Positions 334 through 36,100 of a DNA stretch of 64,000 bases are shown here, piece by piece; positions within the stretch are counted from its first letter, which is position 1; each line of letters starts with the position of its first letter. This DNA is from Paragordius varius (taxonomy: Eukaryota; Animalia; Nematomorpha): contig OZ176053.1 of NCBI GenBank assembly GCA_964247055.1, positions 7,936,001 to 8,000,000 of the forward strand, written 5' to 3'. Made by a program: the position numbers and the translations under genes. The notes under the pieces were generated by a model. The model saw nothing but the letters and a program-made list of their open reading frames with translations, made no database searches and had not been told where the DNA came from.

Positions 334-1187
334 TTATTTAGATAAATCGACTCCAAGCCATAAAGCTAGCTCTTCTTTCTGAAAAATTCCATCATGGTTT
401 TTGTCGCACATTTTGAGCATGAGATTGCGGAATTTCTCTATTTCTTCCGATTTTTCAGATGCATCCACCTAATAATTTTATATTGAATATTTACATCAAC
501 AGTTTTGAGCACATCCCTAATAAAAGCTAGCAGTTCGTTTTCTTCCAACAAACCATCGCCATTCTAATATAAAATAAAAGCAACAATTTACTTTTTATAT
601 ATGTAGGAAAACTCTGATTTATATAAAAAATGATAGTATAATGATTGGAATTTTTAACACATTTTAAATTGTTTAACATAAAAACAATAAAACCCCTAGA
701 TTTAAAAAAAATAATACAGTAAAGATGGATATTATACAAGCAATTAATATATATATATATATGGCTCATCTGCATCATTGGTTTTTTTAAAATATTTTTT
801 AGCGAATGTAATTTTTGATACACTATCAAAAAAAATTTCAATAATACCCACAAGTACACGCAACTTTTAACGGTTTATTTTCAAAATTGAAAAATGGAAT
901 ATTTAAAAAAGTTGATTATGATTAATGGGCATATTGTGGTACAAAAAATATTTACTATCAATTTAATTTGTGAAATTTAAAAGTGGTTAATTTGTTATGT
1001 ATTTGGGCAAACTGTTATGCGAAACCATGTTCATAAAAATTTCAATGCAAATATAACATTCAATGAAACCTTATCGTAATGATGAAAGATTGAGCAGAAG
1101 GTGTCAAATTTTAGGTCATAGTTATTCTTGTGTTTTCATAGGTGGATTCGGTAAAAACATTGTAAGAAAAATTTTGTTGATACATAC

Positions 1188-1226
<39 letters not shown>

Positions 1227-4200
1227 TTTTAAACATAGTAAGTATGTTGGGCAATTAAAGTAATAAATAACGAGAGCTATTACAGACCATTTCGGTATTT
1301 AAATTGGCTAATCCGATTTTTATTTAAATGTCTGTTGGTGTATATTTGATTTTCATTTTTATTAGTGACATCAAAATTATTTTCAATATGCGCGATATTG
1401 TATTTTTTATCCACAATTTTAATGTCTATAACCAAAAAAATGAAAATCATACATACCAACCAATACCTCCTTTACCCAATAAACCGAAATATTGAGCAAG
1501 TATTTATTTTTAATTAGAAATATAAATTAAATTATATTAATTCGGAAACCATCTTAAATTCTTATTAGGGTTGTGCTGGGGTCATGACTTGGTCAGTGAC
1601 TATTTATTTTTTGACCATTGTCATTTTAAAAAAAACAGCTGTTTTTGAAAAATTAGTGGAAATTTTTTGTAAAGTAAGATTTAATTGTTTTTTATATTTT
1701 TTAAAAATAAAAATTTATTTAAATATGCTTATTTAACAAAAAATTGTTAAACATGCTTTGTTATAACATTATCATATAAGAATATCTAGTTATTTCGAAA
1801 AACAAAACTATCAAGCACTTTGCAAAATATGCAATTATTCCATATATGTGAACCAATATTTTAAATAAACATTTTATAATTGGAAATTTAAATAATGAAA
1901 GAAATTTTAAAACAAACTAGGTAAAATTTTATTGGATATATCCAGTATTAAAAACTATGTTTGAAGATTCAGAAGGCCACAAACATGTGGCAAATTTATT
2001 TGAAAAGAAAATTCATCATTAAATTTGATTTAAAATATTTGTAAATAATATCAAAAAAAATATAATATAAACTTTTTAGAAATAGTGAAACGCAAGTTTC
2101 GTACGAAAACTATTTTCACAATCCAATATCGCATTATTTACTTAAGTAGGTCATGACCATGGTCTGACTGGGTCTGACCGGACTTTTTTGAAAAAGCAGT
2201 CAAATGCACAACCCTAATTCTTATATACACTATGAGATTTAAATGGATATTTAAAAATAGGCCATATTGTTCATTGAAAAAAGTCCCTGTTATCGTTTTG
2301 TTATTACAGATGCAACATTTGTAAAAATTCCTTTTGTATAATTTTCAATATAATTTTGAATCAAAAATAATAAGAATACCCTAAAAACGTCCAAAAAACA
2401 CCTTTAAATTTAGATCTAAAGCTTTAATAATAAGCTACTAACATTTTCCAAAAAAATAGGTATGGTTTAAGGGTAAAATTGTTTTTGCTCTGTAAAAGTT
2501 TTTACTGAAACATAAAACAACCCTTGTTCAGAAACAGTGTTACATATTATAATGTCATCAAAAATTTTAGCGGACAAATGTCTAATATGGTTATAAAGTA
2601 CATATTTTTTAATTATCCAATGATTTTTGAGCGTTAAAATTTGTAGTTTTTTTATAAAACTTAATAAGGCATTAAAAACAATAATGTTATTATAATAACT
2701 ACATTGTTAAAGGAATGCATCTATTCTCAGGTTTATAACTAATGTTGCTTGATTGAAATTTAAAAAGTTTGTTTTTTAACAGCTTAAAATGCTTAAAGAT
2801 GCAAGAAGCATATTATAAAAATAGTTAACTTGAATCTATGAATTACCTTGAATTTTATCATATAGTTCTCTTCAGGGGCGATTATTCTGTATATAAAATG
2901 ATGCATGAACAAATATTGAGAAAGTATTTTATTTAATGTGATATTCTATACCGAGACATTTCTTTAAAGCTTAATTGGCCATCGTTATCACTGTCATAAA
3001 GTTCAATCTATAATTTCGTAATGCATATAATAAAATACCCTTTTGAATATAAATGGGTATCAAATTTTGAAAACTTTTTATATGTGTTATACCATTTACA
3101 ATTCAAATTATTCCTTAAATTTAAATTTATCCTTAAAAAATTCAAATTCACCCTCAAATAAATTATATTTATTAAGATTAAAAATTACCTATATTTTTAT
3201 ATATTTTTAAAAAATAAATTTTGTTTTAAATTAAAATAATGTTGAAAAAATAACAAAGTATGCCATAAAGCTATAATTATAATAATGAGTTATATTAGTT
3301 CGAAAACACATAATTTATTTTTAGGGTGTTGAATTATTCAAGGGTGAATTTGAATTGTTCGAGGGAATTGAAACTGCAAACGGTATTCATCTTAATTTTT
3401 TTTGAAAAACAAACAAACATAATGAAAAGCTTGAGAGATATTAATATTAAATGAGTTTTGAACATTATATCTCTATAAAAGTTGATTATTTAAATTATTT
3501 GCGATATGATATGAAGCAAGTGGAAAAACTTAAAATTTCACACAATAATTATACTAGATTAATTATAAAAATAAGGTTAAAAATTCTATAGAATAAATAA
3601 TCTTTTAACTTTTTAGAGATGATAAGTAAAAAGTAAAATTATTATAATTTAAATAGCAATTAGTGTATTATAAATTTAAATTGTAATAAAACGCCATTCC
3701 ATGTTAAATAATTTTAGTAGTGGTGGCTTGAATATAAATTTAATTATTGGTGTATAAATAATAAAATACTAATGATAGGACATATTCGGTAATTTTGTCT
3801 TCCTCGACCTCTTTGTTGTTTAGTTGAAAAAGGTATGTTAAAAATTCCTATAAATTATTATTATTATTATTAATATAAAAACCTATGTAATTGAATTATT
3901 ATGTTGTAAAAATAAAATATAATTATTTTTATTCATAATTTTCTAAGTAATGTCAACCTTAATTTCCTCAGATGTGACAAATCGTTTGTCCTTGGAAAAT
4001 TTGGTCCAAGCCTGCGCGACATACAGCATAGATAAGAAACAAAATAATATAATTGAATTATCATAATCTTATTTATATATTTTATATATGTAGGTATCTA
4101 TGTAAAAGAAAACGCTGTTTATAGAAGCAACACTAATCCAATTACCGTTAAAAAGTCATAACCGGACATTAATGGAAGTTCGTATTGTATGATGGCTAAA

Positions 4201-6348
4201 AAATTTTCTTCAGGTTCTAAAATTTGAGCCATCTATTATAAAATTTTTATGTTATAATGCATGTACATTAAATAAGTTACCCTATTTTTAGATAAATAGT
4301 TAACATTTAACTGTAAGATACAAGAAAACAGGCGGTTTAAATATTTCTATTTTAGCCTTATAAAAATAATGTTAATGAAGCGTTCATCTTATTTTAGCCT
4401 ATGTCCGCTAACCCAAATTTTAATCTGTTTTTATAATCGCAATCACCACAACATTAAAATTTTAAACACTTGTTTGAAATTCTTTTAGTGGTAACTATTC
4501 CCAGCCTACCCTTCGTTCTCAGACCAATAGATAAATTATATAGATTCCAACAGTTTTTAACAAGCTTTAAAAAGAGGAACGGATTCAATACAAATACAAA
4601 TAATCTAATCTAACAGTTGCAAATATTTTTTGAGATGAAGTATTTTGTAAAAAAAATTGTGTTAACAAGATACCAATTTAAAAAATGGATAATTTTAATG
4701 TCAAATTATAATTAGGAAATATCTATTCTACAAACAAGCTTGCATGTTGTGCCTTTAGACGTCTATTTCATCTTATATAAAAATTTAATTAAATAAAATG
4801 TGTTTTGCTGGAACCTAAAATATTTATCTTCGGTACTTAAAATTTAAGTTTTAAATGTTAAATTTATATAATTTGAGATATTACATCTTGTTATCTTTTA
4901 AATCAATAGTATTCCCTTATTCTCTAACTAAACCATTTTTTTTCAAATTATGCAATTTAAATTTGAGTAAGAAAGAGTAAAATCTATCTGTTTAATGAGC
5001 GCTAACGATAACGCTACTTGCGTAACATTTATGCATGATAGTATTTAAGGCCCAGACAAAGAAGATTTTAAGGCACTCCACAAAATAAGAATTGTTTTGG
5101 TATTTTTCAAATCTCAATATTAATTTTTTTGGCCTTTTAAATTATTTAAATATTTTTATTTTCCAAATATTTTTTCCTATCTGAAACATTTTATTACCTC
5201 GCCAATCTCAATTTTTCCATCCTTATTAAGGTCAAATTCTTCCAAAAACTTTTTTTGCAATTCAATTAATTCAGCTTCCGTAGGATTCTGGATATAAAAT
5301 TCGTTGTCGGGTAAACTAACTTTGGCTCTCAGCGCCTTTGTAACCAAATCGCGTACAAATGACTTTAGTTCTTTTCCTTCAATAAATCCATTTCCTACGA
5401 AAACAAAAAAAACATAAAAGTAAAATAAAACAAGCGGCAAGTTTGTGCGTTGATAAAATTTTCTTTGAGATATAAAAACAATTTTATTAAAGTATTAAAA
5501 TTATTTTTATTTCAATAAATAATATATAGAATGAATGGTTTATATTATATAATCAAAAAAATTTATTTTGTTAAAACCCTATATAAAAAATTTGTGCAAA
5601 TTCGACCAAGTTTATTATATTACAAGTAATAATGTAAGACAAAGAATTTTTCAAAACTTAGTAATTAAATCAAATATCCACAAAATTACAGAATGGTAGT
5701 ATCTTCTTAAATAAACTAAAAGAAAAAACCAGTATTAATAAATTTATAATTAAACATAAAATTATCCAGGCATCTATTTGGCATGTAAAAAATTATTCAT
5801 TTACTATATAAAACATTCGTTCCATCAATAATCATTATAAAGTATGCCAAATAAGTACATTCGAATATTTACCATTCACAGTTCTAATTCACCCTTGAAC
5901 AATTTAAAATCACCCTCGAACAAATCAAATTCACCCTAAAATGAATTAGGTATTTTTTGAAATATGAAATTCTGTTAAAATTAATATAATCCTGAAAAAA
6001 TAATAAACTACGTCGTAAAATAAAAATAAACTGTTCATATTAGTGATGAGTTTATTATCCCGAAAACACATAATTTATTTTTAGGGTAAATTTGACTTGT
6101 TCGAGGGTGAATCTGAATTGTTCGAGGGTGAATTTTTAAATGGTTTAATACTTACTATCAGTATCGTATGCATTCCAACATGTGGTAAACTCCTGGGGTG
6201 TTAAACCTACACAAACATGTTTTAACCGTTTAATGATATCTTGGGGCAATTTATTTGATTTAAATAAGCGTCTTCGTATCCGTGTCCCCAATTTTACTGG
6301 CTGTTCTTCACAAACATTAGTAGAAATGTTAGAATTAGATTTCGGCAT
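334..6348 (-). CDS. SCGN: Secretagogin-like hexa-EF-hand Ca2+-binding protein, 11 exons: 6348-6156, 5394-5321, 5287-5198, 4232-4146, 4011-3958, 3847-3770, 3007-2952, 2886-2847, 1126-1070, 563-495, 468-334
   Basis: Manual splicing with GT-AG junctions and consistent phases. EF loops DTDRNGFIEGKE, DLNKDGKIEIGE, DSDNDGQLSFKE, DKNGDGLLEENE, DKNHDGIFQKEE; EENF/EENY linkers. C-terminus EKFRNLMLKMCDKNHDGIFQKEELALWLG resembles secretagogin more than calbindin/calretinin. The exon 9 acceptor (AAG) is weaker than the others. Confidence 0.88.
469..494 (-). other. 26-nt GT-AG intron (SCGN intron 10)
   Basis: gtaaatattcaatataaaattattag; retention frameshifts away EF-hand 6. An alternative donor 6 nt upstream would give 32 nt. 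Confidence 0.85.
1192..1220. repeat. (TA)n microsatellite; others near 746, 11213, 21917, 34661 and 53740
   Basis: Direct reading. Confidence 0.9.
1566..2216. mobile_element. hAT-type MITE (651 bp) in SCGN intron 8
   Basis: 11-bp TIR TAGGGTTGTGC; perfect 8-bp TSD ATTCTTAT (1558-1565 and 2217-2224); a second copy starts at 63411. Confidence 0.9.
3091..3384. mobile_element. Fold-back MITE with ~75-bp TIRs built from AATTCACCCTCGAACAA-like subrepeats
   Basis: Ends (T)ACCATTT...AAACGGT(A); related copies at 5871-6144 and 38421-38595. Confidence 0.75.
5288..5320 (-). other. 33-nt in-frame GT-AG intron candidate (SCGN intron 2)
   Basis: gttagtttacccgacaacgaattttatatccag; good donor and acceptor; removal restores the family-typical EF1-EF2 spacing; no stop if retained. 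Confidence 0.65.
5871..6144. mobile_element. Fold-back MITE copy in SCGN intron 1
   Basis: Mirror arrays of caccctcgaacaa / ttgttcgagggtg; shares cgaaaacacataatttatttttagggt with 3091-3384. Confidence 0.78.
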
Positions 6349-9300: not shown

Positions 9301-9752
9301 ATAAATATCTTAAAACAAATCATGAGTGCAAAATTTTTTATCCAATTAAAACCAGAATTTAGCTTTTTAATGACTCATAAACTCAAAAACCATAAGGATA
9401 TAGTTAAATTTATATATATCAGTTCCCCTTTTTTGAGCGTGGTTTATTTCTGCTCGATTTGTGAAAAAAATCCATGTCAATGTACTGAAATATTTTCCCC
9501 GTATTCTAATTTTTTTATTAAACCTAAAAGCTAATTTAAAAGATAAACCCAAATACATATTTTTCGTATGCAGATACTTAGCTTTTCCAAAGATGAACGA
9601 AATCACAATTCTATATTATTCGCTTTGTAATGTAGCCCACTTGTTATGGTAATAACAAAATTTTTCAGAATATTAATTGCAGTCAATTGCAAATACAAAA
9701 GAGCAAATAATATATTTTTTTAAATTATAAACGAAGTAAATAATAAATAATA

Positions 9753-12700
9753 TTAGTAGGGAGATTTTTGATAATATCCTTCTGAAATCATCGGGGATCT
9801 ATATATCATTTTTTCTTCAATATCTTTAAGGGCATACTTGTGATCACAAAGTTCTAGGGCCTCCCATTCAGCCTTTTTCAAAAATATTTCAAATTTTTAA
9901 ATAAAATGCGGTGAAATTTAAATAACGATTAAAACCGGAATCATTATGATCGCAATTACACAATTTTTTGTAGCGGGTTTCGGTTCCGATTTCAAAAATT
10001 TTGTTTTCCCAATTTTAGTTATGTCCCGTCTACTTTGTAATAAATTATAGCATAATTAGTTTATACGATATGAAAAAAAAACAAAAAATCACACTATAAA
10101 ACGTAAATTTATTGTATGCTATAATATATATTTTTTAAATTAATAGATAATTTGATAATTCATATAAGAAAAGTGGTAAATATATGGTTAGGGTTGTAAT
10201 ATAAATTAAATAAATGTTTTAAGCGTATTTAACAAAGCTATTGATTCTAAATTTTTTAAATAGCTAAAGAAAATCTCAATTTGATCCTCGGTTTGAAAAG
10301 TTGAACATTAGAGTTCAAATTAAGCATCATACTTATAGCTTAAATAATAAGGCCATATTAAAATTGGTAAAAGATGTTAAAAACAAGGTTTATAAGACTA
10401 TAGATTGATTAATTCAACATAAAGATGATTAAATTTGTTTAATATTAAATTAAAAATATTCGTCATAACCCATCATAACCGCGTACATCATATATTTTAA
10501 TAACCTGATAAACAATATTTTTTTATAAAAATTGTAACAAAATATTTCGGATCTACTGATCTCTATCAATTATATGAAATATTTTATTATTTTAATAAAT
10601 TTATTTTACACAAGTTATTAACAAATTGGTTATATATTAAAACTGGTCTTTGCATAATTGTATCTTGAAATAAAAAAAATCTTTAAATATTTGCAATTAT
10701 TAAAGCCATATAGATACTACCTTAAAAGCTTGCTTAGGGTCAGGAGGCATGGCCATTGCCGCGCCCGACATTTGATCCTGCATTCCTTTCGTTTGATCAG
10801 CCGCTATGATGATTAAAAAAATTTTATTGCAAATCGCTTTTATGGATACAAATCAACAACGATTCTCAACAAAATTTAATTTTAGGTTTCATGTATCGGT
10901 TATATGGGTTTTAACTGTTATAGGGTGAACAAATAGGTGTAAGATATAATTTTATCTTTTTTCCTCTCAAAATTGATGATTTAAGCACGAAATGAATTTA
11001 ATCAGACTTGCTCACAAATTTAATTATTGTCCCTATTAATAATTTATAAGATGACCTATATAACATCTATTATGACTGTAAACAGTGCAATGATAAACAA
11101 GATTAATAAGATACTTACCATTATTTTCGCCTAATACCAAGGCATATATGCTTCGCAATCCGAAAACATTGAGAAAGTACCAAGATGCGGAACTTACCCT
11201 AAATAAAATAATTTATATATATATATATATATATACATTGGTATTTAATAAAAATGGAAATTACCATGAAGCATCTAATGATTGTAATTCTACACCCCTC
11301 TGCAACATCGGTTTAAATCGGAGTGTCAAGGGGAATGGGACTTTCGCTATATATATATATAATATAAAGAAGTGAAAATTGTTGCAAAAAGTAAATTATA
11401 TTTATATATAGGGGGCTATATTAAATCATAAATAAAAAAATTTATTCTACTATTCACACCGTGGGGTTGCAAACATATATAAAATAATTTGATTAAGCAT
11501 TAAAGACTTTTTCTTGACAGTAAACGCTCGATATATTGCACATTATAAATATAAACAAATTCAGAAACCATTCTAACCAAAAAAAGTGAGTAAAAGGGCC
11601 AAATCATAAAAATGCAATTCAAAAAGCCAAAGACCATTTGACATTTATAAAACTTTTAAATATATAATAATATTAAAATTTTTTTTGCTAGACATTAATA
11701 ATAAGTGGTAATGGTCCTATAAATATAAAAAAGGATAATATATTATTTGTGAATAAGCATTAAATTGTTAAAACATGGAGAGTATAGGATTTGATACACT
11801 ATTAGGTTTGAAAATATTAGTTTTATATTATTTACAAATTAAAAAAATATATATATATTTTAGGGATATTTAATTTTTTTAAAAAAAGGGAAAATGTAAA
11901 AGAAAGTCGTTTAATAAATTGAAATTGCGATTAACATAATTTAATGAAAAGCATAAATCCATATGTTTTTTTACCTTTAATTTATTAATATGGACTTGAA
12001 AAGCTAATCTTCCCTTTTTATATGTTAGTATCTAATGTTCAATTTTGACAAAATTTAGCCTCAATTTTCTTTTTTAAGCTTATATTAAAAAAATAAGATT
12101 ATGCTACATTAACATACATTATTTAAAAATAAATTGGATATAAACTATCCAAATTAAAATGTAATTTTTATTCTTTACTAAAAATAACAATTATATGAAA
12201 AAATTAAAAAGTTTGACAGCATAAAAAATTTATAATTAATAAGCTAAATAAAGTTATCTTTGATAATAAAATATTTTTTAAAATTATAACTCACTTGTAA
12301 CGAACCCCGAAAATGTCCAATTAATCCAACCACCAATAACAAGCATAGGAAGCATGTTAGTCAAGTTTCCTTTTAACATTTCCGTCATCACACTGGGATC
12401 TAAAACAAATAGTGTTTAATTTTACCTGTCATTGGATTTTGTATTTGAGGCTTTCTTTTTTGAGTTTTGAAAAAACCATTCTCACTATTGTTAAAATAAT
12501 GTTTTCGGGAAAGAAATGCCTACATATATTTTTAAAATACCTGTTTTGGTATAAAGTTGTAATTCTCTCTTAAATTTCGGCTGCGCAACAAAGCTTGACT
12601 ATATGATTAAAATTCTTAAAACCTGTCTTGAATTTGTTGAATATCTACAGGTTTAGCTGTCATTAAAAGTATCGATATATAATGCCTAACAATCCCAACT

Positions 12701-12771
12701 AAGAATGTGATAAGGACTATTGGAATTATGACATAAAATCGAATATCGGGATCCAAAAATAAATCGTGCAT
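9753..12771 (-). CDS. EMC3: ER membrane protein complex subunit 3, 8 exons: 12771-12623, 12598-12541, 12519-12426, 12399-12295, 11346-11265, 11198-11119, 10803-10721, 9872-9753
   Basis: Spliced translation [36 protein letters not shown]...[74 protein letters not shown]...AEWEALEL matches EMC3/TMEM111 end to end. Confidence 0.96.
12400..12425 (-). other. 26-nt intron (EMC3 intron 3)
   Basis: gtaaaattaaacactatttgttttag; frameshift if retained; removal gives NPMTD|PSVMTEM. Confidence 0.93.
12520..12540 (-). other. 21-nt intron (EMC3 intron 2)
   Basis: gtattttaaaaatatatgtag; in-frame TAA if retained; removal gives IPKQ|AFLSRK. Confidence 0.93.
12599..12622 (-). other. 24-nt intron (EMC3 intron 1)
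   Basis: gttttaagaattttaatcatatag; in-frame TAA if retained; removal gives QDS|QALLRSR. Confidence 0.93.
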
Positions 12772-12937
12772 ATTGAATTTTTTCACCTATACGGTCGATA
12801 TTTAAATAATCATGTGTTTTGATTTTTAAGTGCTATAACCTGTCTGCCTTCTTATATGTTTCTCTCATAGTAGCAATTTAAATCTTTTCCTATTATTATT
12901 TTTATATACATGTAGTAGAGAGATAGATATAAAGTTA

Positions 12938-17898: not shown

Positions 17899-20800
17899 AT
17901 GATTAAAATATTGTTTTTATCGCTTGTAATTTTTTTGAGTTTGAGAAATTGCAGTGTAAATGCTGAAGAATCCAATTTATTATATCCGCAAGGAAGTGAC
18001 CATGGTGACTTAAACGTCACCAAAGGAGATGATAAAAGTTTTGAGGAAATAAAGGCTTCCGTACCTTTCCCATTCTTCAAGAAAATATATTCGAATATGT
18101 TTGTAAGTATTTTTATTAATAAATGGCAATTGTTATAATGCATAATTAGTAGGCTGTTTTACCAGAAATATAAATGCTATCCCTTTTCATCGCTAATGAT
18201 CTGACACATACATAATTCGTATTTTTTAAAGAGTTATTTTGCAAAAGAACGCCCGTAGTTTCGCCACTTATGGATTTTACCTACTGTTATGATTAAAATA
18301 TTTTTTTTAAAATATAAAAATAGCGACACCAATGCGTAAAACCAGGATTGATTACCAATCATTTATTTATGGCCAAGACCGATGTCAAATTAACTAGTTA
18401 AAAGGTTTTCATAAGTTTATCATATGATCAACAAACACGGCAGAAAATTACTTTTGTGAAAATCTAAATATTTGTTTGATTTTTAATACTTAAATAATAA
18501 GGCCTATGAAGCAATCAATATACGATTTTTATTACATGGGTAATAAGTGACTGCTTGGTTACTATATTTGGACATGTCAAAACGTCATCCTTTGGTAACC
18601 TATAACTATTAATCAACTGAAGGTTTTTATGGCATAAATATATTTAAATTATCCATTTTTATGGTGTAAAAACACAATTTATTTCTTTCTTAAATCGAAA
18701 CATATTTGTTCTTAAGACTTCCAATTTCTAAAAAAATGTAATTCAGAGTCTAAAATATTTTTCCCGCAAATATCAATTTATGATTGTAATAGAATGTTTA
18801 ATAGCTAAGATAAAGGCATATATTTATTAACCTTGGTGACTCCGAATAGCGAGAAATAATAATTAATTGTAATTATAAAAATTAACAATTGTTCTTATCA
18901 TATAAATTTTAGATAAATACAAATGGAATCATATCATTTAAAAATCCAATACCACAATATATACCCGAAAAATTTCCAGTTAAACGTGAAAATCTAACCG
19001 TAATAGCTCCATATTGGTCAGATATTGATACATCGTCCAAGGATTCTGGACAAATACTTGTACGACAAACTACAAAGGATGAAGATCTTGATATGATAAC
19101 AAAGGATATAATTAAAGCCTTCCCAAAATTCAAAAAATTTAAAACTTTATGGGCGCTTATTGCGACGTGGAAAGATGTTACACCTTATGGGGCAAATGAT
19201 ACAAAATTGGTAATTTTTTAGGCTTTTTAAAAAATTTTACCGTTTGTTTTGCTTTTACTACCGTAATATATGGTCATTTCACATTTTATGGCCAATTGAA
19301 AAATACAACAGCATATGGGTAGGAAAGAATGGTTGAAATTACAATTTTCCCCATCTTATAACATGAAATGTCATTAATTGAACAAAATTTGTTTTGTGTC
19401 AAACGCTATTGTATTACCCTTGGCCAACAATAATGTGAATCCACTATTAATGTCCACTATATTATAAATTTAACTAGAAAAATACATTTCAAGCCGCTTT
19501 AGCTACGAACGGCAAACATTCATTTGTTATTTACAATTATCCAAAATTAACGTGGACCTCCAGTTATTCGGTAGCTGGTAATGCAAGTGGGCTTGGAGGG
19601 AAATCGGCTCAGGTATTTTTTTATAAAATACATTCATAATTAATCAAAAAAATAATTATACAGGCGGGATTTAATGAAGGAGATGGCAAAAAATACCTTA
19701 AACTTCCGGGTTCAGGAACGCCTAAAATTTTAGAAATCGCCAAAGAAAGCAATATCAAGACACCGGGAAAATGGATTTATCGCACAGATCAAAATAAAAT
19801 CGAAAAGGGTGGATGTAACACAAAAGGTTAGAATACATATTGTAACAATAAATATTTTATTGTTGAGTGTACAACATTCATAAACCATTAATTGGTTTTA
19901 GATTATCTCCACGGTACCTATAGTTAGTTTTTTATTATAAAACTTAATTTAAATATGATGTTTTTGTCATACACTAACTATTTATTTCTATTTCGAATTT
20001 CCATTAACCACAAATTTTATCCAAACTAGAATTTATGATGGAATTTCCGAATAATTTGATTAATTATATAAAAATTTAATAATATTTGTCACATTAGGAG
20101 GCATATGAATGAGCCTTGAGCCAGAAATGAGCCGAATCCTTCCTGGCTTAAATATAGCTCAAGAGTTAAATTCGAAATGGGAAAACTTTTGGTCACTATT
20201 TTTGTGTCTTAATTAATTTCAGAATCTAAGAACACAAAAGGCAGGTGAAAAATATGGTTTGGTAAAATGTATTCTGGCACGAATTATGAGTTAATAAATA
20301 GACCGGCAAATTTGAGCCTTAACCTCTTTTTCCCATGGCAAATTTACAATGAAACACTTTTAGTATTAAACGATACCTAATTTTTTTGCTGATTTTCGAA
20401 AACATTCAGACCTATGATATTATCAATATGATTACAATTTTGCATTAGCCTTATCCATTTTTTCACTAATAAAGACATCAAATATATGTCATTACCTTAG
20501 GTGCTTTAGTGATAGAGCCATCAAGTGGAAGCATGCTAGGTGGTACTCTACTCAAAATAACTGGCCCATGTTTGGATATGATTGAAGCTGCTGAAAAGGG
20601 GGAAACGGAACAACCAGATGACAAGGATGAGAGCGAAACACAAAAACCGAATAAGAAAGAAAAACGAGATGACGCACAAAAAGCAAACAACAAAGGACAA
20701 TACATCGATGCTGGAGAACTAGTTAAAAACGAAAGAGTTAAATGTATGATTGGTAATGAAGTGATTGATGCAAATGTAGATGTGAAAAAGGGTGAAATTT

Positions 20801-23800
20801 CGTGCATAACACCTACTATCCCTTGGATAGGTAGAGTTCCTATACTAGTCTCTTTAGATGGAGGAGATACGTTTCCATTCATGGGTATTCTTAATACAGG
20901 TAAAAGTTGTAACAATATAGTAAATGTCAAATATTTTTTTTGAGATAAAAATATAAAATCAACAAGATGTAAGTAAAAAACCCAATTGTGATATATATTG
21001 AAATATTTGGTTAAAAATGCAAAGATCTTAAAACCCAGATATTTAAAAGAATTATAAATGCAAAACTATGAGAAAAAATTCGTATAATTTCAAAAATACC
21101 ATTAAATAATTATTTTTTGGTATTAATATATTATATATCAGTTTATTGATTTTGTTATACATGGCCGAGTAAAATTAATTATGTTAACCCCGAATGACTG
21201 CTGTCATAAAAGGGAATAATTTTTGATCTAGTTGAAGATTTAACCCTATAATAAAAAAAAATTCTACAGGAAGTACTGATACTTTGAAGCCAGAAATAAC
21301 TCGAAGAAATATGCTTAATTGGACCCAATCTCCAGAACCACCTTACTACATACAATGGGATCCTGAAAAATTGCCTAAAACAAAGGAAGTCGATGTTGAT
21401 TTGATGGGATATGCGTATTTTTTAAATAATTTTAAATTAATAAATGTGTCAAATCGATAAAAATGTAAGCAACACGCACCAGCCTACAGGTTAGAGTCAT
21501 TTAAATTTTAGATATTGGATCGTATTAACCAAGCATTGTACAATTAATTATTAATTGTTCTGTAATATGTCCCTAAATATATATGTAAAAACAAATTGAA
21601 AGCAAAAACACAAAATGTTTTTGAGATAAATTTTCAAACCATTTATGCTCCGTTTCAATGATGATAATAATGTACCAATCCGTTTATTTAGAGAAAAGGA
21701 TGGTAAGATAGAACCCAAATTTTATCCGATAGCACATGACGTTCCAAACACCGGAAATTATAATATTGAACCATGGCGTGTAGCGAATCGACCCAAAGAC
21801 ATAAAAGTTGGGGCCTTGCGCATCACTCCAAAACGTAGTCCTGATGACCAAATCGAAATGTAAATCTATTTACTTGTGTGCACTGAAAAATATAAAATTT
21901 GGATTCAATTATGTAAACATATATATATATATATACATAATATGCATAAACGCTTTAATTTAAAAACATTTTCTGGATTTATTCAAGATTTTTTGGTTAA
22001 TTATAATTAACTGTTTTATAGCTAATGATAACCCTCTATTTTCTGTTATCAGTTTTTTTGCATTTATTTCTCTTATATGGCTTTTGACCACCAACATTTT
22101 TTTGTAAAAAACATCGACCACCATCCAAAAAATAGTCGACAAAAATTCACAAGAGGTAGCCCTAAATTTAATGCACTATGTATATATAAAGACGTAACAC
22201 GCCCATGTTATGGTCGGATATACATCCACTTGGTTGGTTTTTACGTGGAGACAATCCACCCCATGTATTTGCACAAGATGCACAGCGTTTATGTCAACAG
22301 GCTTTGGAAGCGGATAAACGAAGACCGGTACAAATGCTCGATGTTCCTGCTTGCCCTTGCACCCAGTGGCAAGCTAATAGAGATATTCTTTCGTTTGAAA
22401 GAGACCCCGTTTGTGAAGCACACAATCATTACTATCCCCTTCCTCCGGATCGTATGGGGTGCCCGGCAAAAGGCAATGATACTTGGTCCTGTTTTAGATC
22501 AATATTTCCTGGGTATGTATTTATGTTACAGCAAAGTATAAATTATATGCATAGCATTTCACTAATCGATTGCCTATTGTCAATAAAAATATATGTGGAA
22601 ATGGATTTAATTCTTTTATCAATTGTATGAATCTCCAAAATGTCATTTGAGAATTATTTTGTTTTATCAAATTAGTTAAAATCGCGAAATATAAAATTTA
22701 GTAAATATTGTGATAAATTTCTTGGCAGAGATTATTAATTTCCAAATTACTTTGCTATTATAATTATATTAAAAAAGCATAAAAATTATTGGATTTAATT
22801 CATTTATTGAGCCCATAAGTCCAGTGCGTACCGAGCATTTTCGGGCGTCCGGGGTATAAGACATTTCTGGCGTCCCTCCCCCCTTTTTATAAAAGCCAAT
22901 AAAACAATTTAGTAAAAAAAAATACAAACGTTGTAACCTAAATATAAATTTTAAATCTATATATTTATATGATACTAAATTTATTCAATGGTACTAATTA
23001 GGTGAATAATCTATATATTTATGAAAATGGAAAATGCTGGCTTTGTGATCTGGTACAGGAAAACTGGTAGACCCAATCAAATCCAAATATCGAAAAAATA
23101 TAATCATTAATAAATGTCCCGACAATAGCTTCGCCCTTTTTTTGAAATAGGCCCCCATCGTGTTTTTGAGACAATTTTCCGGAGAACGTGTTGGACCATT
23201 CGATTTCAAATATGATTTTTGTTTACTTATTTTCGATTGCGCCGAACATAGTCGAGTCACTTTTTTGATTTAGGCCCTCTTTTTACCCGCTCCCCCCGTA
23301 AAATGCCATTTTTTTCAAAAAAAACAAAGTCCACAAAAATATTTTTTTGATTGTATTTTTTTGCCCAAGGTATGAGACTGTAAAAATTCGAGAAGGATTT
23401 TTCGTTATGCCTGTTACAAGGCAAAAATTTTAGTCAGGCGTTTCTTTAATGATAGCTGCTGAGTAAGGAGTATCTATCATATGTATAGCATGTTAAAAGA
23501 TATATGGATATTAAAACATTATTTAAGGTAATCTATAGATTTATAAAAATGGAAAATGCTGGCTTTGTGATCTACAGGAAAAACGGTAGACCCATTTAAA
23601 TCCAAACTTCGAACCCCCCCCCCCCCCCCCCCAGAAGTCCGAAGGACTTCCTCGGGCTGCGTAGCAGCACGAGATTCACGCTAGTAGTTTATATTTATAG
23701 GGATTATTACCTAAATTGCTGAAAAATCTCATTTGAAAGTTCTTATTATTTTTGCATAATTAAAATTTAATTTTAAAAAATCATTTAGGCGCCCCTAAAT

Positions 23801-26800
23801 AACGGCGCCCTGGACATGATGCACCCCCTTGCCCCCCCTCGGTACCCCCCTGCATAATCTTATAAAAACCCGTTAAATGGACTCTCCTTAAGATAAAAAC
23901 GATGACGCTGAGTGATAAATATCAATCTATACTAAAAATTGTGATCAATTTTATTGAAAACGCCTGTTTAAAATGTTAACAAATGGTTTAAGCATATTTT
24001 AGCGTCTTAGATAAGGGAATTGGGAGCATACTATCCATAAAAGTCCTTGTCTACATGTTTGCTACCGAATTTTTTAAATTGGTTTTCAAAAATTAATATT
24101 TAACTTCAAAGGCAAACGAATCTTTAGATGAAATTTGAGATGATAGATTTAAAAGAGGGCATCAAATTAATTATAAAAAAGTTTCAATATATTTAAGAGT
24201 TTTTCGTTTTAAGCAATTTTAAAATATAGTATAATATACGATATTAACCAAATTTTATGATTTAAAAGAAATATAAGAAAATTATTTAAAAAAATTTTCA
24301 AACTCTGTGATGTTTAAATATAATATTTTAAATAATTTAATCTGAAGTATTTCCCACAAAAACTTAAACACAATGTTAAATTCCCTATTTTTTCCAAGTC
24401 ATACAATATTTTATCCTTACTTATCATATATTATGAAATAGGGTGTTTTTGCCGCTCTTAATAAGATTAAAAAAATTGGCAAATATTTCCATAATTTAAT
24501 GTTTTATTTTCTGATTAAATATTTCCGAAATATAAATTATTCCATCTACATAACGCACATTGCGTTTAAAATGAAAGTATTCGTGAATGAATCATTATAT
24601 ACAGGAAGCGCTTGTTTGTGCACAAAAATATATATTCAATATTAATCATTTTAATGTAGAAAAAGCGGTGCCGGACAACAATGCTGTTATACCAAAGAGG
24701 GTCGTCTTTTGCTCAACCAAAAAGGAGATAAAGGTGCTGGTACAATACAATTAGCTCACCCCAAAGGATGTATGGACATCTCGCCGTTTGATCCAAGACT
24801 TCGTGGACCAAATGCCATACATAAATATGCACCCAAACAAATGTATATATATCATATTTTTATACTCATCATGAAAAACCAAGGAAACAGTTATTTTCAT
24901 ATATATCTTTATATAAACATTAATTAGATCGAGAACCAACAATATACCAATCGTTTCTAATTTGATAATTGATGAATTCCCCGCTTTGGCCTGCTGCCAC
25001 TGGTCGCCTCAAACAACAGGATTGTGTCGTGAATACATGAATAGACGACCTTCTGGTGACTGCCATAATTATGAACCGCCTAGAATAGGTTTGATACATA
25101 TTTTTAAAAAAAGGGATGGCCAATCTTTTTTTTTCTAAAAATATTTTTATCATGAAATCATTAATCTATCATACGTTAGGGCTTGGATTCGGAGATCCAC
25201 ATATTATAACATTGGATGGATTATCGTACACGTTCAATGGTTTGGGCGAATTTATTATCCTCCAATTAAATGGTGATTTTTTTGAGGTGCAAGGAAGAAC
25301 TCAGCGTGTTTTAAATTTAAATGGTATATTATCAATTGAAACAGTTTACTCATCTAAATGATTAAACAAAATACACAGAGTAGATTATATGTAATATTAG
25401 TTTTATTATAATATCTAATATGTTGATACCATTCGGTAACACATTATTTTATCTCGAACAGGGGTACTCAACGCGCGGGCCTTCCAAAATATTTCAACGG
25501 CTCGCGAGAAATTTCTAATGCAAATTTTTACAAAATCCAAGAAATTATTTTCTTAAACAAAATTCTTAATAAATCTTTCCGAATTTCAGCAATGACGAGC
25601 AAAAAATGTTAAAATAAATAGATTTTTTACAGTCTTAAATGTAATAAAATATTTGTTAATGCCCATATTTTTCGAATTCGACCCGCCGGATTTTTTCGAT
25701 CAAATGGAGTGCGAAACCATTTGTTTTGGACACCCCTGATATATAGTCTAAATGGGGTAATATTTATTGGGGAATTACTGCGTTCTTGTTTTTCCCTTAA
25801 AACCGAAACAAATGATTTCCAGCAAACGTGTTACTATACACTTGTGCCTACCCGCAGCAATAAAACATATTTTAAGATACCCTTTTGAGATACTGATATG
25901 TTTCAAATTTGACGGTTTGATAATTATATCAGTAACATAAACGACATATTTTCAAGAGATACGCCTTTAGATATTTACTAATTTGTCTAATCACTATTAA
26001 AATAATTAATACATCCAATGATAAATAGGTCGTGATTTAAGGGCTACATCATGGAAGGCCCTAGCTTTCAAGGAGAACGGAAAAAAACCGATTCATGTTG
26101 AAATTGGTGATAACAACGCTCTTGATATTTATATCGATAACAAACTTTGGGACGAGACAAATGACGGAGAATTAAACCAAAAAAATGCCAGTTATAAAAT
26201 GCAAGGTTTGTATATATTCGCTAGTAGATATTTTCCAAATATTTTAATACCTAAAATTTGGGTTATTAAATGTAGACTATGATATAAGACGACACAATGA
26301 CAATTCCGTCGATATTGTTTTTAAAGAAGGAATATTGATTCAAATTAATGCAACACAGAATGTGCTAATCTTCAAAATTGCCTTACCCAGAATCTACAAA
26401 AGTAATTTAACCTTATACGAAATGTATTACATTTTATTTCATGTATAAAATATCTTTGGCAGATAAAACTAGAGGCCTTTTAGGCATATGGAATGATGAT
26501 ATTACAGATGATTTAACTACTCCGGAAGGGCAGATAATTAGAGTCGATGTCTCGCCAGAAATATTATTTCAAGATTTTGGACTCTCATGTGAGTTGATTT
26601 CTTCTATCTATGTCATATATTATGTAATCTTATTTATATATGATCGTTTTTCTCTAAATTAATCTAGGGGCGATTCCAAATGCCAATAAATCGATATTAC
26701 ATTATACGGATGGATTATCTCATGCAATATGTAACAAAGAATTGCACACTTTCCGTCCAGTATTTGATTGGACAGCAGAGCTGGATGAATTAGATCAGGA

Positions 26801-27524
26801 GACGATTCACGATTTATGTGGAAATAGCATGGAATGCGCTTATGATTATGCCCTCACTCATAATCAGGAGATTGCTTTGTCATCGAAACAAGCGTATGCC
26901 GATTACATCTCACAACCGGAACATAAAACATTTTTCAATCGTAAATTAATGATCTATGTGAATTTTGTTAGGCATGGTTTAAGGTTATACGAGTATTTTA
27001 ATGGCTAAAAGGGTATTCAATTTACATGTCAGTAGCAATTAAGTTTTGCTTATATGAGTTACAATTATTAAACTTTCACAATTTTTAAGAATGTAACAAA
27101 AACAAAAAAATTCATACATGGCTACTGACATGTATATTTAATACCAGGATAGCTATTTAAAATACAGATAGGACCTATAAAGCACTCGTCACCGTGTATA
27201 TAATATTTTAATAGTTTTAGCGATTAAAAACATCTTTAATGTTATTATAAAATCTTTTATACTACTTATTTACTTTCTATGTTAGTGAACAGAGTTTGTA
27301 AGTCATTAACTGAACCTGAAAATGGATCTATCATCAAAACATCAAATTTACCAGGATCAATATCGAAATATGGGTGTAAGAAGGGATTTTTGTTACAAGG
27401 ACCTTCAACTCGTTATTGCCTGAAGGATGGAACATGGACAGGTGCTTCACCAATGTGCGTCCCAATTAATTCGACAGACTTGTCAAGTTTAAATATTATA
27501 CTTATTTTTAGGGTATCGATTTAA
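17899..27524 (+). CDS. mesh: Mesh/SUSD2-like protein (signal peptide, NIDO, IPT/TIG, AMOP, VWD, Sushi), ~1086 aa, 16 exons: 17899-18102, 18913-19209, 19478-19612, 19664-19826, 20501-20899, 21270-21414, 21692-21859, 22192-22512, 24660-24842, 24928-25088, 25180-25323, 26029-26205, 26276-26401, 26463-26588, 26668-26940, 27286-27524 (3' end uncertain)
   Basis: Exons sum to 3261 nt in frame. NIDO (IAPYWSDID, ATWKDV, NTFQAALAT, AQAGFNEGDG), IPT (PSSGSMLGGTLLKITGPC), AMOP (PACPCT, QQCCY, CCHW), VWD with FGDPHIITLDG and TRGLLGIWN, Sushi (CKKGFLLQGPSTRYCLKDGTWTG). Confidence 0.9.
22822..23852. mobile_element. CAG(T/G)G(G)CGTACCGAG-TIR MITE carrying a nested insertion, in mesh intron 8
   Basis: Termini cagtgcgtaccgag and ctcggtacccccctg; flanks cataagtc/cataatct; inverted sister at 62574-62765. 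Confidence 0.7.
23010..23684 (+). mobile_element. Non-autonomous Helitron-like insertion with duplicated 5' end
   Basis: A|TCTATATATTTATGAAAATGG start, repeated at 23532; GCTGC-GTA-GCAGC hairpin then CTAG|T end; absent from the sister MITE at 62574-62765. Confidence 0.75.
25459..25738. mobile_element. Charlie/Buster-type hAT MITE (~280 bp)
   Basis: CAGGGGTACTCAA...GGACACCCCTG; internal tttgttaatgcccatat shared with other copies. Confidence 0.8.
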
Positions 27525-28232: not shown

Positions 28233-28275
28233 CTAGCTGACTGTCTAGCATTGCTGTGACTTAGTTGAAATGCGC
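28233..28275 (-). mobile_element. Helitron-like 3' terminus of a different family
   Basis: Minus strand ...gtcacagcaatgctagacagtcagCTAG|T; 5' end not located. Confidence 0.45.
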
Positions 28276-30515: not shown

Positions 30516-30845
30516 CAGGGGTGTCCAGCACCAATGGCTTAGCGGGCCCAATTTCGGATCCAAAAATCTGACGGACTGCATTGAAAAAAATATGGGCATT
30601 GACTAATATTTTATTAAATTTTATACACAAGACTATAATATTATTAAGAGAAATTCGATTAATTAATATCTCTACATACCGTACAAATTTGAAAATTTTC
30701 CCTAATTGGTTTGAAAACAAAAATAATTTATATTAATTGTAATGACACATGCCAAATTTGTAATTAAATTTTTTTATTTAAAAATATAATTTGGATATTT
30801 ATTCCTTAATCTTTGATTTAAGTTAAGTAATCGCGGTCCAAATGA
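30516..30845. mobile_element. Same hAT MITE family, inverted, one TIR missing
   Basis: CAGGGGTGTCCAG start; gggcattgactaat internal motif; right boundary approximate. Confidence 0.6.
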
Positions 30846-34500: not shown

Positions 34501-34933
34501 GTCTACAATAAACTTTAATATAATTTCTACCTTAGCCATTGGGTTAAAACGTTGTAATCTTTTATTTAGTGTTGGTATATATTTAAATAGCATTTTTTCA
34601 AAAGTTTGAAATACCTATAAAGGGGTGTTTTTATAATTTTAATATAAATTTATTTATAATATATATATATATATATATATATGACAATGACAATAACACG
34701 GGGTACACCCCTTCGTACAATTGGTGAACCAATTGTCAGAGTACCGTGAGCTATATAAGTATTTGGAAAAAACCTTTTAACTTTTCTAATAAAATTTTTA
34801 TGATTGCAAATGTTTATATATATAATATATGTATGTATATAAAATATTATTGATTTAATTTTTTACAAATAAGGCCTCAGCAAAATTATTCACATATGCT
34901 CATAAACTTATTTTTTTGCATATACTCATTAAC

Positions 34934-36100
34934 ATGGTCAAGTTTAGTGGAAAATACAAGCTAGTCAGAAGCGAGAATTTCGATAAATATCTGGAAGCAA
35001 AAGGTTTTTTTAGATTTAATTTAGGTGCTAATTTTTTTGTTATAAAAATGGCTACAGCGCTAACGCCGACTTTAGAAATAAATATTGACAACGATGTTTG
35101 GATTCTTAAGGTTTATACAATATTAAAATCCATTACCGATATGAAATTTAAAATTGGTGAAACATTTGAACACAAACGTATGGATGGAACTTTGTGCAAA
35201 GTTTTTTTATTTTATAATTTTAGTAGGTTCGTATGACTATTGAGGATAATAAGTTGATCGAGGAAGAGACGCCTGTAAATAATCCTGAACATTGCCAAAC
35301 AATCGTTCGAATTTGGGAAGATGATGATCATGTAGTCTTAGTATGTTTATCTTAATATAATTTGATAAATTCCGGTTGAGTTGAAAATTTTGTAACGTAA
35401 TATGTTTTCGATTATTTTGCAATCGGTAATCAAGAAATAAATTGACTAGTTCAATCAATTATATTTGTATCCAAATGTCTTTATACGCTTCTTTATGGTC
35501 TATCTTTTTATTTAACTATTAAAATATTTTGTCCCGATTTTATAATTTAGATTCCATTTAAAAAATCTTAGCTTTTATAACCGTACGAATGCTTTTTGTT
35601 AAAAAATAAGAAATTACTTAAATATTCCAAAAATAAGAAATTACTTCAATATTCCACTTTTCTTAATAATAATAATAACCGTATATAATTATGTTTAAAG
35701 CGTACTTTTTTCGATTTAATTTCAATATGATACTTATTTTACTCAAGATAATGCCTTTTTTAAAAAAATATATTATTAATAACTCTTCTTACACAATGAT
35801 TATACTATAGTCATAGTAAAATTTGAATCTATTGAATAAATATGCGATATATTCGCAAATTAATAACTGATTTACTATATTATGGTCATAGAAAATTGAA
35901 ATAAAATTAATATTTATTTTTATAATTTTTTTCTAGTGATAAAATTGATTATGTCATATGACTTGATTTGACAAAACAACCGTATTTTTATGACCTTAGT
36001 GCTTATTTTCATCGATACAATATGTTTTTTTGATGCATCATTTTAGGTCCTAACTTGCAAAGATATTATAGCCAAACGTTATTTTGAACGAATAATGTAA
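34934..36100 (+). CDS. FABP: Fatty-acid-binding protein (iLBP family), 137 aa, 4 exons: 34934-35003, 35025-35200, 35227-35340, 36047-36100
   Basis: FSGKYKLVRSENFDKYLEAKG, FKIGETFEHKRMDG and final strand VLTCKDIIAKRYFERI; three introns at the usual iLBP positions; exons sum to 414 nt. Confidence 0.92.
35004..35024 (+). other. 21-nt in-frame intron candidate (FABP intron 1)
   Basis: gtttttttagatttaatttag, phase 1 inside the Gly codon where iLBP genes have intron 1; retention inserts 7 aa (GFFRFNL) with no stop. Confidence 0.75.
35201..35226 (+). other. 26-nt intron with TAGTAG tandem acceptor (FABP intron 2)
   Basis: gtttttttattttataattttagtag; only the distal AG keeps the frame open (CK|VRMTIEDNKL). 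Confidence 0.9.

What the first reader, a model, noticed from the sequence alone, without database searches (positions are those of the whole stretch)
469..35226. A distinct class of ultra-short (21-33 nt) spliceosomal introns in a repeat-rich animal genome
Seen: 7 of the 50 introns I resolved are 21, 21, 24, 26, 26, 26 and 33 nt, all GT-AG and AT-rich, in three unrelated genes; the next sizes are 51, 61, 61, 65, 66, 70 nt and up to 5.3 kb. Five of the seven must be removed or conserved proteins break. Established: most animal spliceosomes have a practical floor of about 40-65 nt; introns under 30 nt are known mainly from ciliates, nucleomorphs, microsporidia and dicyemids, which have compact genomes. 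Inference: here they coexist with long transposon-filled introns, which suggests two recognition modes (intron definition with a ~21-26 nt ruler alongside exon definition) and possibly a modified spliceosome.
Basis: partly seen in the sequence, partly recalled or inferred. Interest (0 to 1): 0.9.

Follow-up and report, generated by a model that had tools for sequence, protein, structure and literature searches.

The report
Tiny 21-26-base introns, ecdysozoan genes
Three ordinary genes of this AT-rich, repeat-rich animal genome (an ecdysozoan, probably a horsehair worm) are interrupted by six GT-AG introns only 21-26 bases long. Three of them sit exactly where a priapulid, a scorpion and an oyster have ordinary introns, so they look like real introns below the supposed 30-base animal minimum, although I could get no RNA to show the cutting.

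Summary
Six of the seven reported ultra-short introns hold up: EMC3 24, 21 and 26 nt; FABP 21 and 26 nt; secretagogin-like 26 nt.

- **Sequence.** All six are GT...TAG and 81-88% A+T.
- **EMC3.** Removing its three gives a 256-aa protein that aligns without gaps at 79% identity to scorpion EMC3. All seven EMC3 introns, the three tiny ones included, lie at the same CDS nucleotide and phase as ordinary introns (102-6515 nt) in Priapulus, Centruroides or Crassostrea.
- **DNA.** Contigs from two separate studies carry the EMC3 tiny segments unchanged in length, so they are not an assembly artefact.
- **The seventh.** The 33-nt candidate is in frame, has no stop and has coding-like composition (64% A+T). 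It is more likely exon.
- **RNA.** The two runs I laid that are labelled RNA covered none of EMC3, even at 80% likeness, so excision is inferred and not shown.
- **Taxon.** The EMC3 tree and the FABP matches point to an ecdysozoan. They fit neither published case of animal introns under 30 nt (myxobolid Myxozoa and Dicyema, PMC13644364).
- **Interpretation.** The idea of two recognition modes or a modified spliceosome was not tested.

This scan has noted the same phenomenon many times on other pieces of this genome. One earlier agent reports RNA confirmation there; I did not check it.

The parts
9753..12771 (-). EMC3 gene. It has 8 exons: 12771-12623, 12598-12541, 12519-12426, 12399-12295, 11346-11265, 11198-11119, 10803-10721, 9872-9753. 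Its introns are 24, 21, 26, 948, 66, 315 and 848 nt.
   Evidence: The spliced 256-aa product is 79% identical to Centruroides EMC3 and gap-free over residues 1-240. Exon 1 matches Pfam EMC3_TMCO1.
12599..12622 (-). EMC3 intron 1. 24 nt, GTTTTAAGAATTTTAATCATATAG. It lies after CDS nt 149, phase 2. If retained, it gives a TAA stop at once.
   Evidence: Priapulus (1395 nt), Centruroides (102 nt) and Crassostrea (1657 nt) have an intron at the same position and phase. It is present with no differences in DNA contigs of X1 and X3.
12520..12540 (-). EMC3 intron 2. 21 nt, GTATTTTAAAAATATATGTAG. It lies after CDS nt 207, phase 0. If retained, it gives a TAA stop. Position +4 varies between T and G.
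   Evidence: Centruroides (3413 nt) and Crassostrea (294 nt) have an intron at the same position. An X3 contig spans it. The 12537 A>C difference is heterozygous in X1 and fixed in X3.
12400..12425 (-). EMC3 intron 3. 26 nt, GTAAAATTAAACACTATTTGTTTTAG. It lies after CDS nt 301, phase 1.
   Evidence: Priapulus (2056 nt) and Crassostrea (244 nt) have an intron at the same position. An X1 contig (12244-12508) and an X3 contig (12397-12702) span it without gaps.
34934..36100 (+). FABP gene. It has 4 exons: 34934-35003, 35025-35200, 35227-35340, 36047-36100. Its introns are 21, 26 and 706 nt.
   Evidence: It matches solved FABP/CRABP chains at E 2e-13 and the Pfam Lipocalin profile at positions 26-79. 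One search gives the model. Four exons and three introns is the canonical FABP layout (PMC3796463).
35004..35024 (+). FABP intron 1. 21 nt, GTTTTTTTAGATTTAATTTAG, phase 1. It is in frame and has no stop.
   Evidence: The unspliced translation carries a 7-residue insertion, at exactly this place, relative to all three best solved FABPs. It is 86% A+T.
35201..35226 (+). FABP intron 2. 26 nt, GTTTTTTTATTTTATAATTTTAGTAG. It lies after CDS nt 246, phase 0. The acceptor is TAGTAG and only the distal AG keeps the frame.
   Evidence: If retained, the protein stops after 11 codons. Removal continues the frame into ...TIVRIWEDDDHVVL and the last exon VLTCKDIIAKRYFERIM.
335..6348 (-). Secretagogin/calbindin-like gene with six EF-hands. 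It has 10 exons. Its introns are 761, 965, 134, 110, 762, 65, 1720, 506 and 26 nt.
   Evidence: Searches give the model. Exon 2 matches secretagogin at E 9e-9. Exon 10 matches EF-hand 6 of secretagogin at E 4e-10.
469..494 (-). Secretagogin-like intron 9. 26 nt, GTAAATATTCAATATAAAATTATTAG, phase 0. It separates EF-hand 5 from EF-hand 6.
   Evidence: The two exons are in different frames. If the segment is retained, the frame shifts, a stop follows and EF-hand 6 is lost.
5288..5320 (-). The 33-nt GT-AG candidate inside secretagogin-like exon 2. It would encode VSLPDNEFYIQ. It is more likely coding sequence than intron.
   Evidence: It is in frame, has no stop and is 64% A+T, like the coding sequence. 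For removal: exon 2 is exactly 11 residues longer than the EF1-EF2 stretch of zebrafish secretagogin.
19613..19663 (+). A 51-nt intron in the NIDO domain of the MUC4/SUSD2-like gene. It is the shortest intron I checked in the next size class.
   Evidence: GKSAQ|AGFNEGDG is joined by removing a GT...CAG segment. Pfam NIDO matches the neighbouring exon.

Best explanation
**What it is.** The six 21-26-nt segments are genuine GT-AG spliceosomal introns. They are ancestral bilaterian introns that shrank to near-minimal size in this lineage. They sit in the same genes as introns of 51 nt to about 1.7 kb.

**How it most likely works (inferred, not shown).**
- An ordinary U2-type spliceosome removes them by intron definition.
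- The 5' signal is reduced: GT followed by A/T, with no G at +5 in any of the six.
- The acceptor is always TAG.
- The branch adenosine must lie only about 7-17 nt upstream of that acceptor.
- Retention is mostly harmless to the cell, because five of the six then give a premature stop.

**Shown here.** Presence in DNA, conserved position and phase, and restoration of conserved proteins.

**Exception.** The 33-nt candidate is most likely exon.
For: - **Sequence.** All six are GT...TAG and 81-88% A+T, against 62-65% in the coding sequence.
- **EMC3 protein.** Removal of its three gives a protein 79% identical and gap-free over 240 residues to scorpion EMC3.
- **EMC3 positions.** The window's seven EMC3 introns follow CDS nt 149, 207, 301, 406, 488, 568 and 651. 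Each is the exact position and phase of an ordinary intron in Priapulus, Centruroides or Crassostrea. The tiny ones are at 149, 207 and 301.
- **FABP.** The unspliced reading has a 7-residue insertion, relative to solved FABPs, exactly at the 21-mer. The gene has the canonical four exons and three introns (PMC3796463).
- **Secretagogin-like gene.** EF-hands 5 and 6 are in different frames, 26 nt apart.
- **DNA.** Contigs of two studies carry the EMC3 tiny introns at the same length. There is one substitution, at intron position +4, and no joined form.
- **No odd RNA structure.** No special fold surrounds them.
- **Precedent.** Introns of 22-27 nt with reduced GTa...AG signals are documented in myxobolids and Dicyema (PMC13644364).
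Against: - There is no RNA evidence. The two runs labelled RNA for this organism's label that I laid covered none of EMC3 at 80% likeness, and all five listed RNA-labelled runs held next to none of the words of either stretch.
- Position conservation was shown with tools only for EMC3.
- For FABP intron 2, the support is frame continuity plus family resemblance that I judged by eye. Exon 3 alone finds nothing in PDB or Pfam.
- The sample is small (n = 6), so the statements on motifs and branch points are descriptive.
- I did not establish the taxon independently below 'ecdysozoan-like'.
Confidence: 0.85

Rival explanations
1. The segments are artefacts or lesions: assembly or polishing insertions, or frameshifting indels in decaying pseudogenes. 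They only look like introns because GT...AG is common in AT-rich DNA.
For: Short GT...AG segments are frequent by chance here. There were 327 open-frame candidates of 18-40 nt. No RNA shows these genes expressed.
Against: - Short-read contigs from two different studies carry the EMC3 segments at identical length.
- The three EMC3 segments fall on the exact nucleotide and phase of introns in three other phyla.
- After removal the proteins are full length, conserved and free of stops.
Confidence: 0.03
2. The segments are removed at the DNA level, like ciliate internal eliminated sequences. Alternatively they are removed from RNA by a non-spliceosomal endonuclease and ligase route, like the 26-nt XBP1/HAC1 intron or tRNA introns.
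For: The 21-26-nt size resembles the XBP1 intron and Paramecium eliminated sequences. The DNA runs may be dominated by germline tissue (inference).
Against: - The termini are GT-AG, not TA-TA, and there are no paired stem-loop cleavage sites.
- Folding of the introns with their flanks is no better than shuffles for five of six.
- The DNA contigs show no joined form (weak evidence).
- The positions are ancestral spliceosomal intron positions.
Confidence: 0.03
3. Some in-frame members are optional. The FABP 21-mer and the 33-mer would be retained in part or all of the mRNA as coding 'exitrons', so the true obligate class is smaller: five segments of 21-26 nt.
For: Both are multiples of three and free of stops. 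The 33-mer has coding-like composition, 64% A+T.
Against: - The FABP 21-mer is 86% A+T.
- It lies in the phase-1 glycine codon where, from memory, vertebrate FABP genes have their first intron.
- It would insert 7 residues into the helix-turn-helix region, which no solved FABP tolerates.
Confidence: 0.3

Closest known systems
Ultra-short introns of myxobolid Myxozoa (Henneguya, Thelohanellus, Myxobolus), median 22-27 bp (PMC13644364)
   Same: They are GT-AG introns of about 21-27 nt at conserved positions between conserved exons. The 5' signal is reduced (GTa) and the polypyrimidine tract is short or absent. A-rich stretches upstream of the AG are the presumed branch site. The organism is a parasite.
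   Different: - In myxobolids the tiny class is the bulk of introns in compact genomes of 20-200 Mb.
- Here the tiny introns sit beside 51-70-nt and kb-sized introns, in AT-rich DNA full of repeats.
- Here the host is ecdysozoan-like by the EMC3 tree, not a cnidarian.
Dicyema japonicum introns (about 26 bp), the other published animal case (as cited in PMC13644364)
   Same: They are animal introns under 30 nt with reduced splice signals, in a parasite.
   Different: - Dicyemids are usually placed among the spiralians (my own knowledge) and have a small genome.
- The window's EMC3 falls outside the well-supported clade that holds all the spiralian sequences in the tree.
- Long introns coexist with the tiny ones here.
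Ciliate tiny introns (Paramecium about 25 nt, Stentor 15-16 nt; PMC5014332, PMC13644364)
   Same: The size range is the same, they are AT-rich, and in most cases retention gives a premature stop.
   Different: Ciliates have essentially only tiny introns. Here there are two or three size classes within one gene.
Human 'ultra-short' introns (43-65 nt) and SPF45/RBM17-dependent short-intron splicing (PMC4463651; 10.1101/784868)
   Same: It is a separate mechanistic class of short introns within a genome of long introns.
   Different: The human floor is about twice as long. Whether an RBM17-like factor acts here was not tested.

Membership tests
U2-type GT-AG spliceosomal introns | GT at the 5' end and AG at the 3' end | tested here: met
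   All six firm segments are GT...TAG.
U2-type GT-AG spliceosomal introns | Absent from mature mRNA, with exons joined exactly | tested here: inconclusive
   The two runs labelled RNA that I laid (X4, X6) covered none of EMC3 at 80% likeness. All five listed RNA-labelled runs had word shares of 0.00 for both stretches.
U2-type GT-AG spliceosomal introns | Position and phase homologous to introns of orthologous genes in other lineages | tested here: met
   The three EMC3 tiny introns, at CDS nt 149, 207 and 301, match introns of Priapulus, Centruroides and Crassostrea exactly. For FABP the only support is the canonical three-intron layout (PMC3796463). This was not tested for the secretagogin-like gene.
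U2-type GT-AG spliceosomal introns | Branch-point adenosine and lariat formation | not testable with these tools
   Each intron has TTAAT-, TAAAC- or TCAAT-like motifs 7-17 nt upstream of the AG, but such motifs are expected by chance at 85% A+T.
U2-type GT-AG spliceosomal introns | Present in genomic DNA (not an assembly artefact) | tested here: met
   Tested for EMC3 only. X1 contigs span introns 1 and 3 with no differences. One X3 contig (12397-12702) spans all three with one substitution.
Lineages with genome-wide ultra-short introns (Myxobolidae, Dicyema) | Median intron length under 30 bp | tested here: not met
The rest run from 51 nt to 1.7 kb. The genome-wide distribution was not available.
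Lineages with genome-wide ultra-short introns (Myxobolidae, Dicyema) | [quoted passage not shown] AG) | tested here: inconclusive
   None of the six tiny introns has G at +5. Four of the 13 longer introns in the same genes do. Position +4 of one is polymorphic. The sample is too small for a logo.
Lineages with genome-wide ultra-short introns (Myxobolidae, Dicyema) | The host is a myxozoan or a dicyemid | tested here: not met
   EMC3 is 79% identical to chelicerate EMC3. It falls with arthropods and nematodes, outside the clade of Priapulus, Spiralia and Deuterostomia supported at 99/95. The best solved FABP matches are mite proteins.
IRE1/XBP1-type or tRNA-type non-spliceosomal introns | Cleavage sites in conserved stem-loops or a bulge-helix-bulge | tested here: not met
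   Folds of the introns with their flanks are weak and no better than shuffles in five of six.
Nematomorpha (taxon of origin) | Sequence affinity to a nematomorph genome | not tested
   Only indirect support. The window's 27.2% G+C (from the base counts) and its repeat richness resemble Gordionus montsenyensis (26.93% G+C, 63.8% repeats; 10.1101/2023.06.26.546503). Earlier scan notes name a horsehair worm. My searches returned no nematomorph protein.

The most novel reading that the evidence does not exclude
This is a third, independent animal origin of introns under 30 nt, and the first in an ecdysozoan with a large, transposon-laden genome. There a sharply bounded 21-26-nt class is spliced by its own intron-definition mode, with a 5' splice site to branch point distance of about 15 nt or less, alongside exon-defined kb introns. 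A corollary follows: gene predictors and BUSCO-type surveys that forbid such short introns would break these genes. [quoted passage not shown]
Probability: 0.4. Interest if true: 0.85.

Novelty: new variant of a known kind. Interest (0 to 1): 0.7.

Why it matters
- **The 30-nt limit.** Until 2026, introns under about 30 nt were held to be absent from animals. The only published exceptions are myxobolid Myxozoa and Dicyema, both with compact genomes, and there the shortening is read as part of genome reduction (PMC13644364). An ecdysozoan with a repeat-rich genome that keeps 21-26-nt introns next to kb-sized, transposon-filled introns in the same genes would separate extreme intron shortening from genome compaction.
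- **A natural test system.** One spliceosome handling two very different intron geometries could be studied directly.
- **Annotation.** Default minimum intron lengths in aligners and gene finders would mis-model genes such as EMC3, FABP and the secretagogin-like gene here. That could inflate apparent gene loss in this phylum. This last point is inference and was not tested.

Tried and rejected
- **RNA evidence.** Two run searches found only RNA-labelled runs with a word share of 0.00. The single read-laying run, on EMC3 with two such runs at 80% likeness, laid nothing.
- **Homologue searches.**
  - FABP exons 1-2 found no candidate.
  - EMC3 exon 1 found only exon-sized fragments at 68% identity or less, with no close relative.
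  - A search with crinoid EMC3 gave 120 full-length EMC3 proteins, none from a nematomorph.
- **Exact-protein look-ups.** Two long window ORFs are not on record, so I could not trace the assembly.
- **Rfam.** The scan of the window found no snRNA or other RNA family.
- **FABP exon 3.** Alone it finds nothing in PDB or Pfam.
- **Blind scan.** A scan for all GT...AG segments of 18-40 nt that join open frames returned 327 candidates. Nearly all lie inside long ORFs, so it cannot discover such introns without homology.
- **Other candidates set aside.** A 22-nt candidate at 26646-26667 would require an I/Y/F-rich read-through, and an ordinary longer intron fits better. A 39-nt candidate at 39252-39290 in the RhoGEF gene was left unresolved.
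- I did not look up or fold the spliced EMC3, FABP or secretagogin-like proteins. They have no reference, and long sequences are not to be typed.
Full report
**The window.** It is 27% G+C and full of (TA)n runs and transposon fragments. In the flagged range I found four genes:
- a secretagogin/calbindin-like EF-hand gene (minus strand, 335-6348);
- EMC3 (minus strand, 9753-12771);
- a MUC4/SUSD2-like gene with NIDO, AMOP, VWD and Sushi domains (plus strand, about 17.9-27.5 kb);
- an FABP gene (plus strand, 34934-36100).

Pfam supports these identities.

**EMC3.** Reading the minus strand and modelling the gene gives eight exons and introns of 24, 21, 26, 948, 66, 315 and 848 nt.
- The spliced product is 256 aa. 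It aligns from residue 1 to 240 without a gap, at 79% identity, to EMC3 of the scorpion Centruroides, and at 70-79% to other arthropods and to Priapulus.
- I fetched the EMC3 loci of Priapulus caudatus, Centruroides vittatus and Crassostrea. I solved their exon structures by exact protein-to-genome matching.
- The window's introns follow CDS nucleotides 149, 207, 301, 406, 488, 568 and 651. Every one is the exact position and phase of an intron in at least one of the three species.
- The tiny ones compare as follows:

| CDS position | Size here | Priapulus | Centruroides | Crassostrea |
|---|---|---|---|---|
| nt 149 | 24 nt | 1395 nt | 102 nt | 1657 nt |
| nt 207 | 21 nt | no intron | 3413 nt | 294 nt |
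| nt 301 | 26 nt | 2056 nt | no intron | 244 nt |

The three tiny segments are orthologues of ordinary ancestral introns.

**FABP.** The gene starts at 34934.
- The 21-nt segment 35004-35024 lies in phase 1 of a glycine codon. Translated straight through, exons 1-2 match solved FABPs at E 2e-13, but with a 7-residue insertion exactly there in all three printed alignments.
- The 26-nt segment 35201-35226 (GT...TAGTAG) must go, using the distal AG. Otherwise the protein stops 11 codons later.
- After removal the frame runs on through ...TIVRIWEDDDHVVL. After a 706-nt intron it reaches VLTCKDIIAKRYFERIM and a stop.
- The result is the canonical FABP gene of four exons and three introns (PMC3796463). 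From memory, the first two junctions (CDS nt 70 in phase 1, and nt 246 in phase 0) correspond to those of vertebrate FABP genes. I did not test this with tools.

**Secretagogin-like gene.** I built a ten-exon model with introns of 761, 965, 134, 110, 762, 65, 1720, 506 and 26 nt.
- The 26-nt intron (494-469) separates an exon that aligns to EF-hand 5 from one that aligns to EF-hand 6 of secretagogin at E 4e-10.
- These two exons are in different frames, so retention destroys EF-hand 6.
It is GT-AG with a good donor. Its removal would make the EF1-EF2 stretch exactly as long as in zebrafish secretagogin.
- Against that, it is in frame, has no stop and is 64% A+T. The coding sequence is 62-65% A+T and the six tiny introns are 81-88%. 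I rate it as probably exon, to be settled by RNA.

**DNA and RNA.** The run search found two presumably DNA runs of 'organism A' (94% and 87% of the EMC3 words), one run of 'organism B' from another study (31%), and five RNA-labelled runs with a share of 0.00. I laid two of the RNA-labelled runs and two DNA runs on EMC3.
- X1 contigs span introns 1 and 3 with no differences.
- One X3 contig (12397-12702) spans all three tiny introns without gaps and with a single substitution. This is 12537 A>C, which is intron 2 position +4, T to G. It is also heterozygous in X1.
- No joined form appears in the DNA runs.
- The RNA-labelled runs X4 and X6 laid nothing at 80% likeness.

So the segments are real DNA in at least two data sets, but their excision from RNA is not shown here. 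Those runs may be another species under the same label, or not transcriptomes at all.

**Anatomy of the class.**
- There are six members, of 21, 21, 24, 26, 26 and 26 nt.
- All end in TAG. None has G at +5, whereas four of the 13 longer introns of the same genes do.
- All have an A-rich TTAAT-, TAAAC- or TCAAT-like stretch 7-17 nt before the AG. That stretch could be a branch site, but at 85% A+T it is not significant.
- If retained, five of the six give a premature stop.
- No RNA structure stands out.
- The next sizes I verified are 51, 65 and 66 nt, so the gap between classes is real in this window.
- The tiny introns are the first three of EMC3 and the first two of FABP, but the last one of the secretagogin-like gene.

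**Taxon.**
- EMC3 falls with arthropods and nematodes, outside a well-supported clade (99/95) of Priapulus, spiralians and deuterostomes.
- The best solved FABP matches are mite proteins.
- This speaks against a spiralian origin, and the high identity to arthropod EMC3 makes a myxozoan unlikely.
- Earlier notes of this scan call the genome a horsehair worm.
- The base composition and repeat load fit the published Gordionus montsenyensis genome: 26.93% G+C, 63.8% repeats and BUSCO 71.6% (10.1101/2023.06.26.546503).
- I found no nematomorph sequence to compare with, so I treat the assignment as likely but unverified.

**Literature.**
- A paper of September 2026 states that introns under 30 bp were considered absent from animals. 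Among 51 genomes it reports them only in myxobolid Myxozoa and Dicyema japonicum, with reduced GTa...AG signals and canonical U2 and U2AF. It predicts further lineages (PMC13644364).
- Full-text searches for Nematomorpha or hairworm together with introns found nothing on intron size.

**Verdict.** They are best explained as bona fide minimal spliceosomal introns of ancestral origin in an ecdysozoan with a bulky genome. This is a new variant of a phenomenon published for two other animal groups.

This scan has reported the same finding repeatedly on other pieces of this genome. One earlier agent reports RNA confirmation there (s1-310045), which I could not check.

Noticed in passing
window 9860-10534: The X1 DNA contigs fall into two haplotypes of about equal depth (187 and 194). 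In EMC3 intron 7 these differ by dozens of substitutions and indels, including a 214-nt stretch replaced by 196 other letters. Intronic heterozygosity in the sequenced individual is therefore very high.
   Followed up: no
window 9700-12850 (run X3): A run filed under a different organism label and study ('organism B', 519 Mb of contigs) holds this locus at about 5x depth. It shows 1 difference in 306 nt across the EMC3 tiny introns. It is therefore the same or a very close species under another label, or a host-plus-parasite sample.
   Followed up: partly
runs X4-X8: All five runs labelled RNA for the window's organism label hold next to none of the words of two exon-bearing stretches. The two that I laid (X4, X6) put nothing on EMC3 at 80% likeness. 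They may be another species under the same name, or not transcriptomes. A 2026 preprint reports species misidentification in public nematomorph data (10.64898/2026.02.03.703548; abstract only, as listed).
   Followed up: no
window 47460-49280: Fragments of a non-LTR retrotransposon reverse transcriptase lie in inverted orientation: 48024-48452 on the minus strand against 48538-49188 on the plus strand, with near-identical peptide stretches. This looks like an inverted duplication or nested insertion inside the large RhoGEF gene region.
   Followed up: no
window 38595-52505, minus strand: A RhoGEF (DH-domain) gene has very long, low-complexity, N/S/T-rich exons, seen as ORFs of 195-405 aa. A possible 39-nt GT-AG intron at 39290-39252 was not resolved.
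   Followed up: no
window 35220-35226: FABP intron 2 has a TAGTAG tandem acceptor. The proximal AG would place a TAG stop as the first codon of exon 3, so only the distal AG gives a protein.
   Followed up: partly
window 17884-27521, plus strand: A MUC4/SUSD2-like gene has NIDO, IPT/TIG, AMOP, VWD, C8-3_MUC4 and Sushi domains. I found no intron under 51 nt in the parts I checked.
   Followed up: partly
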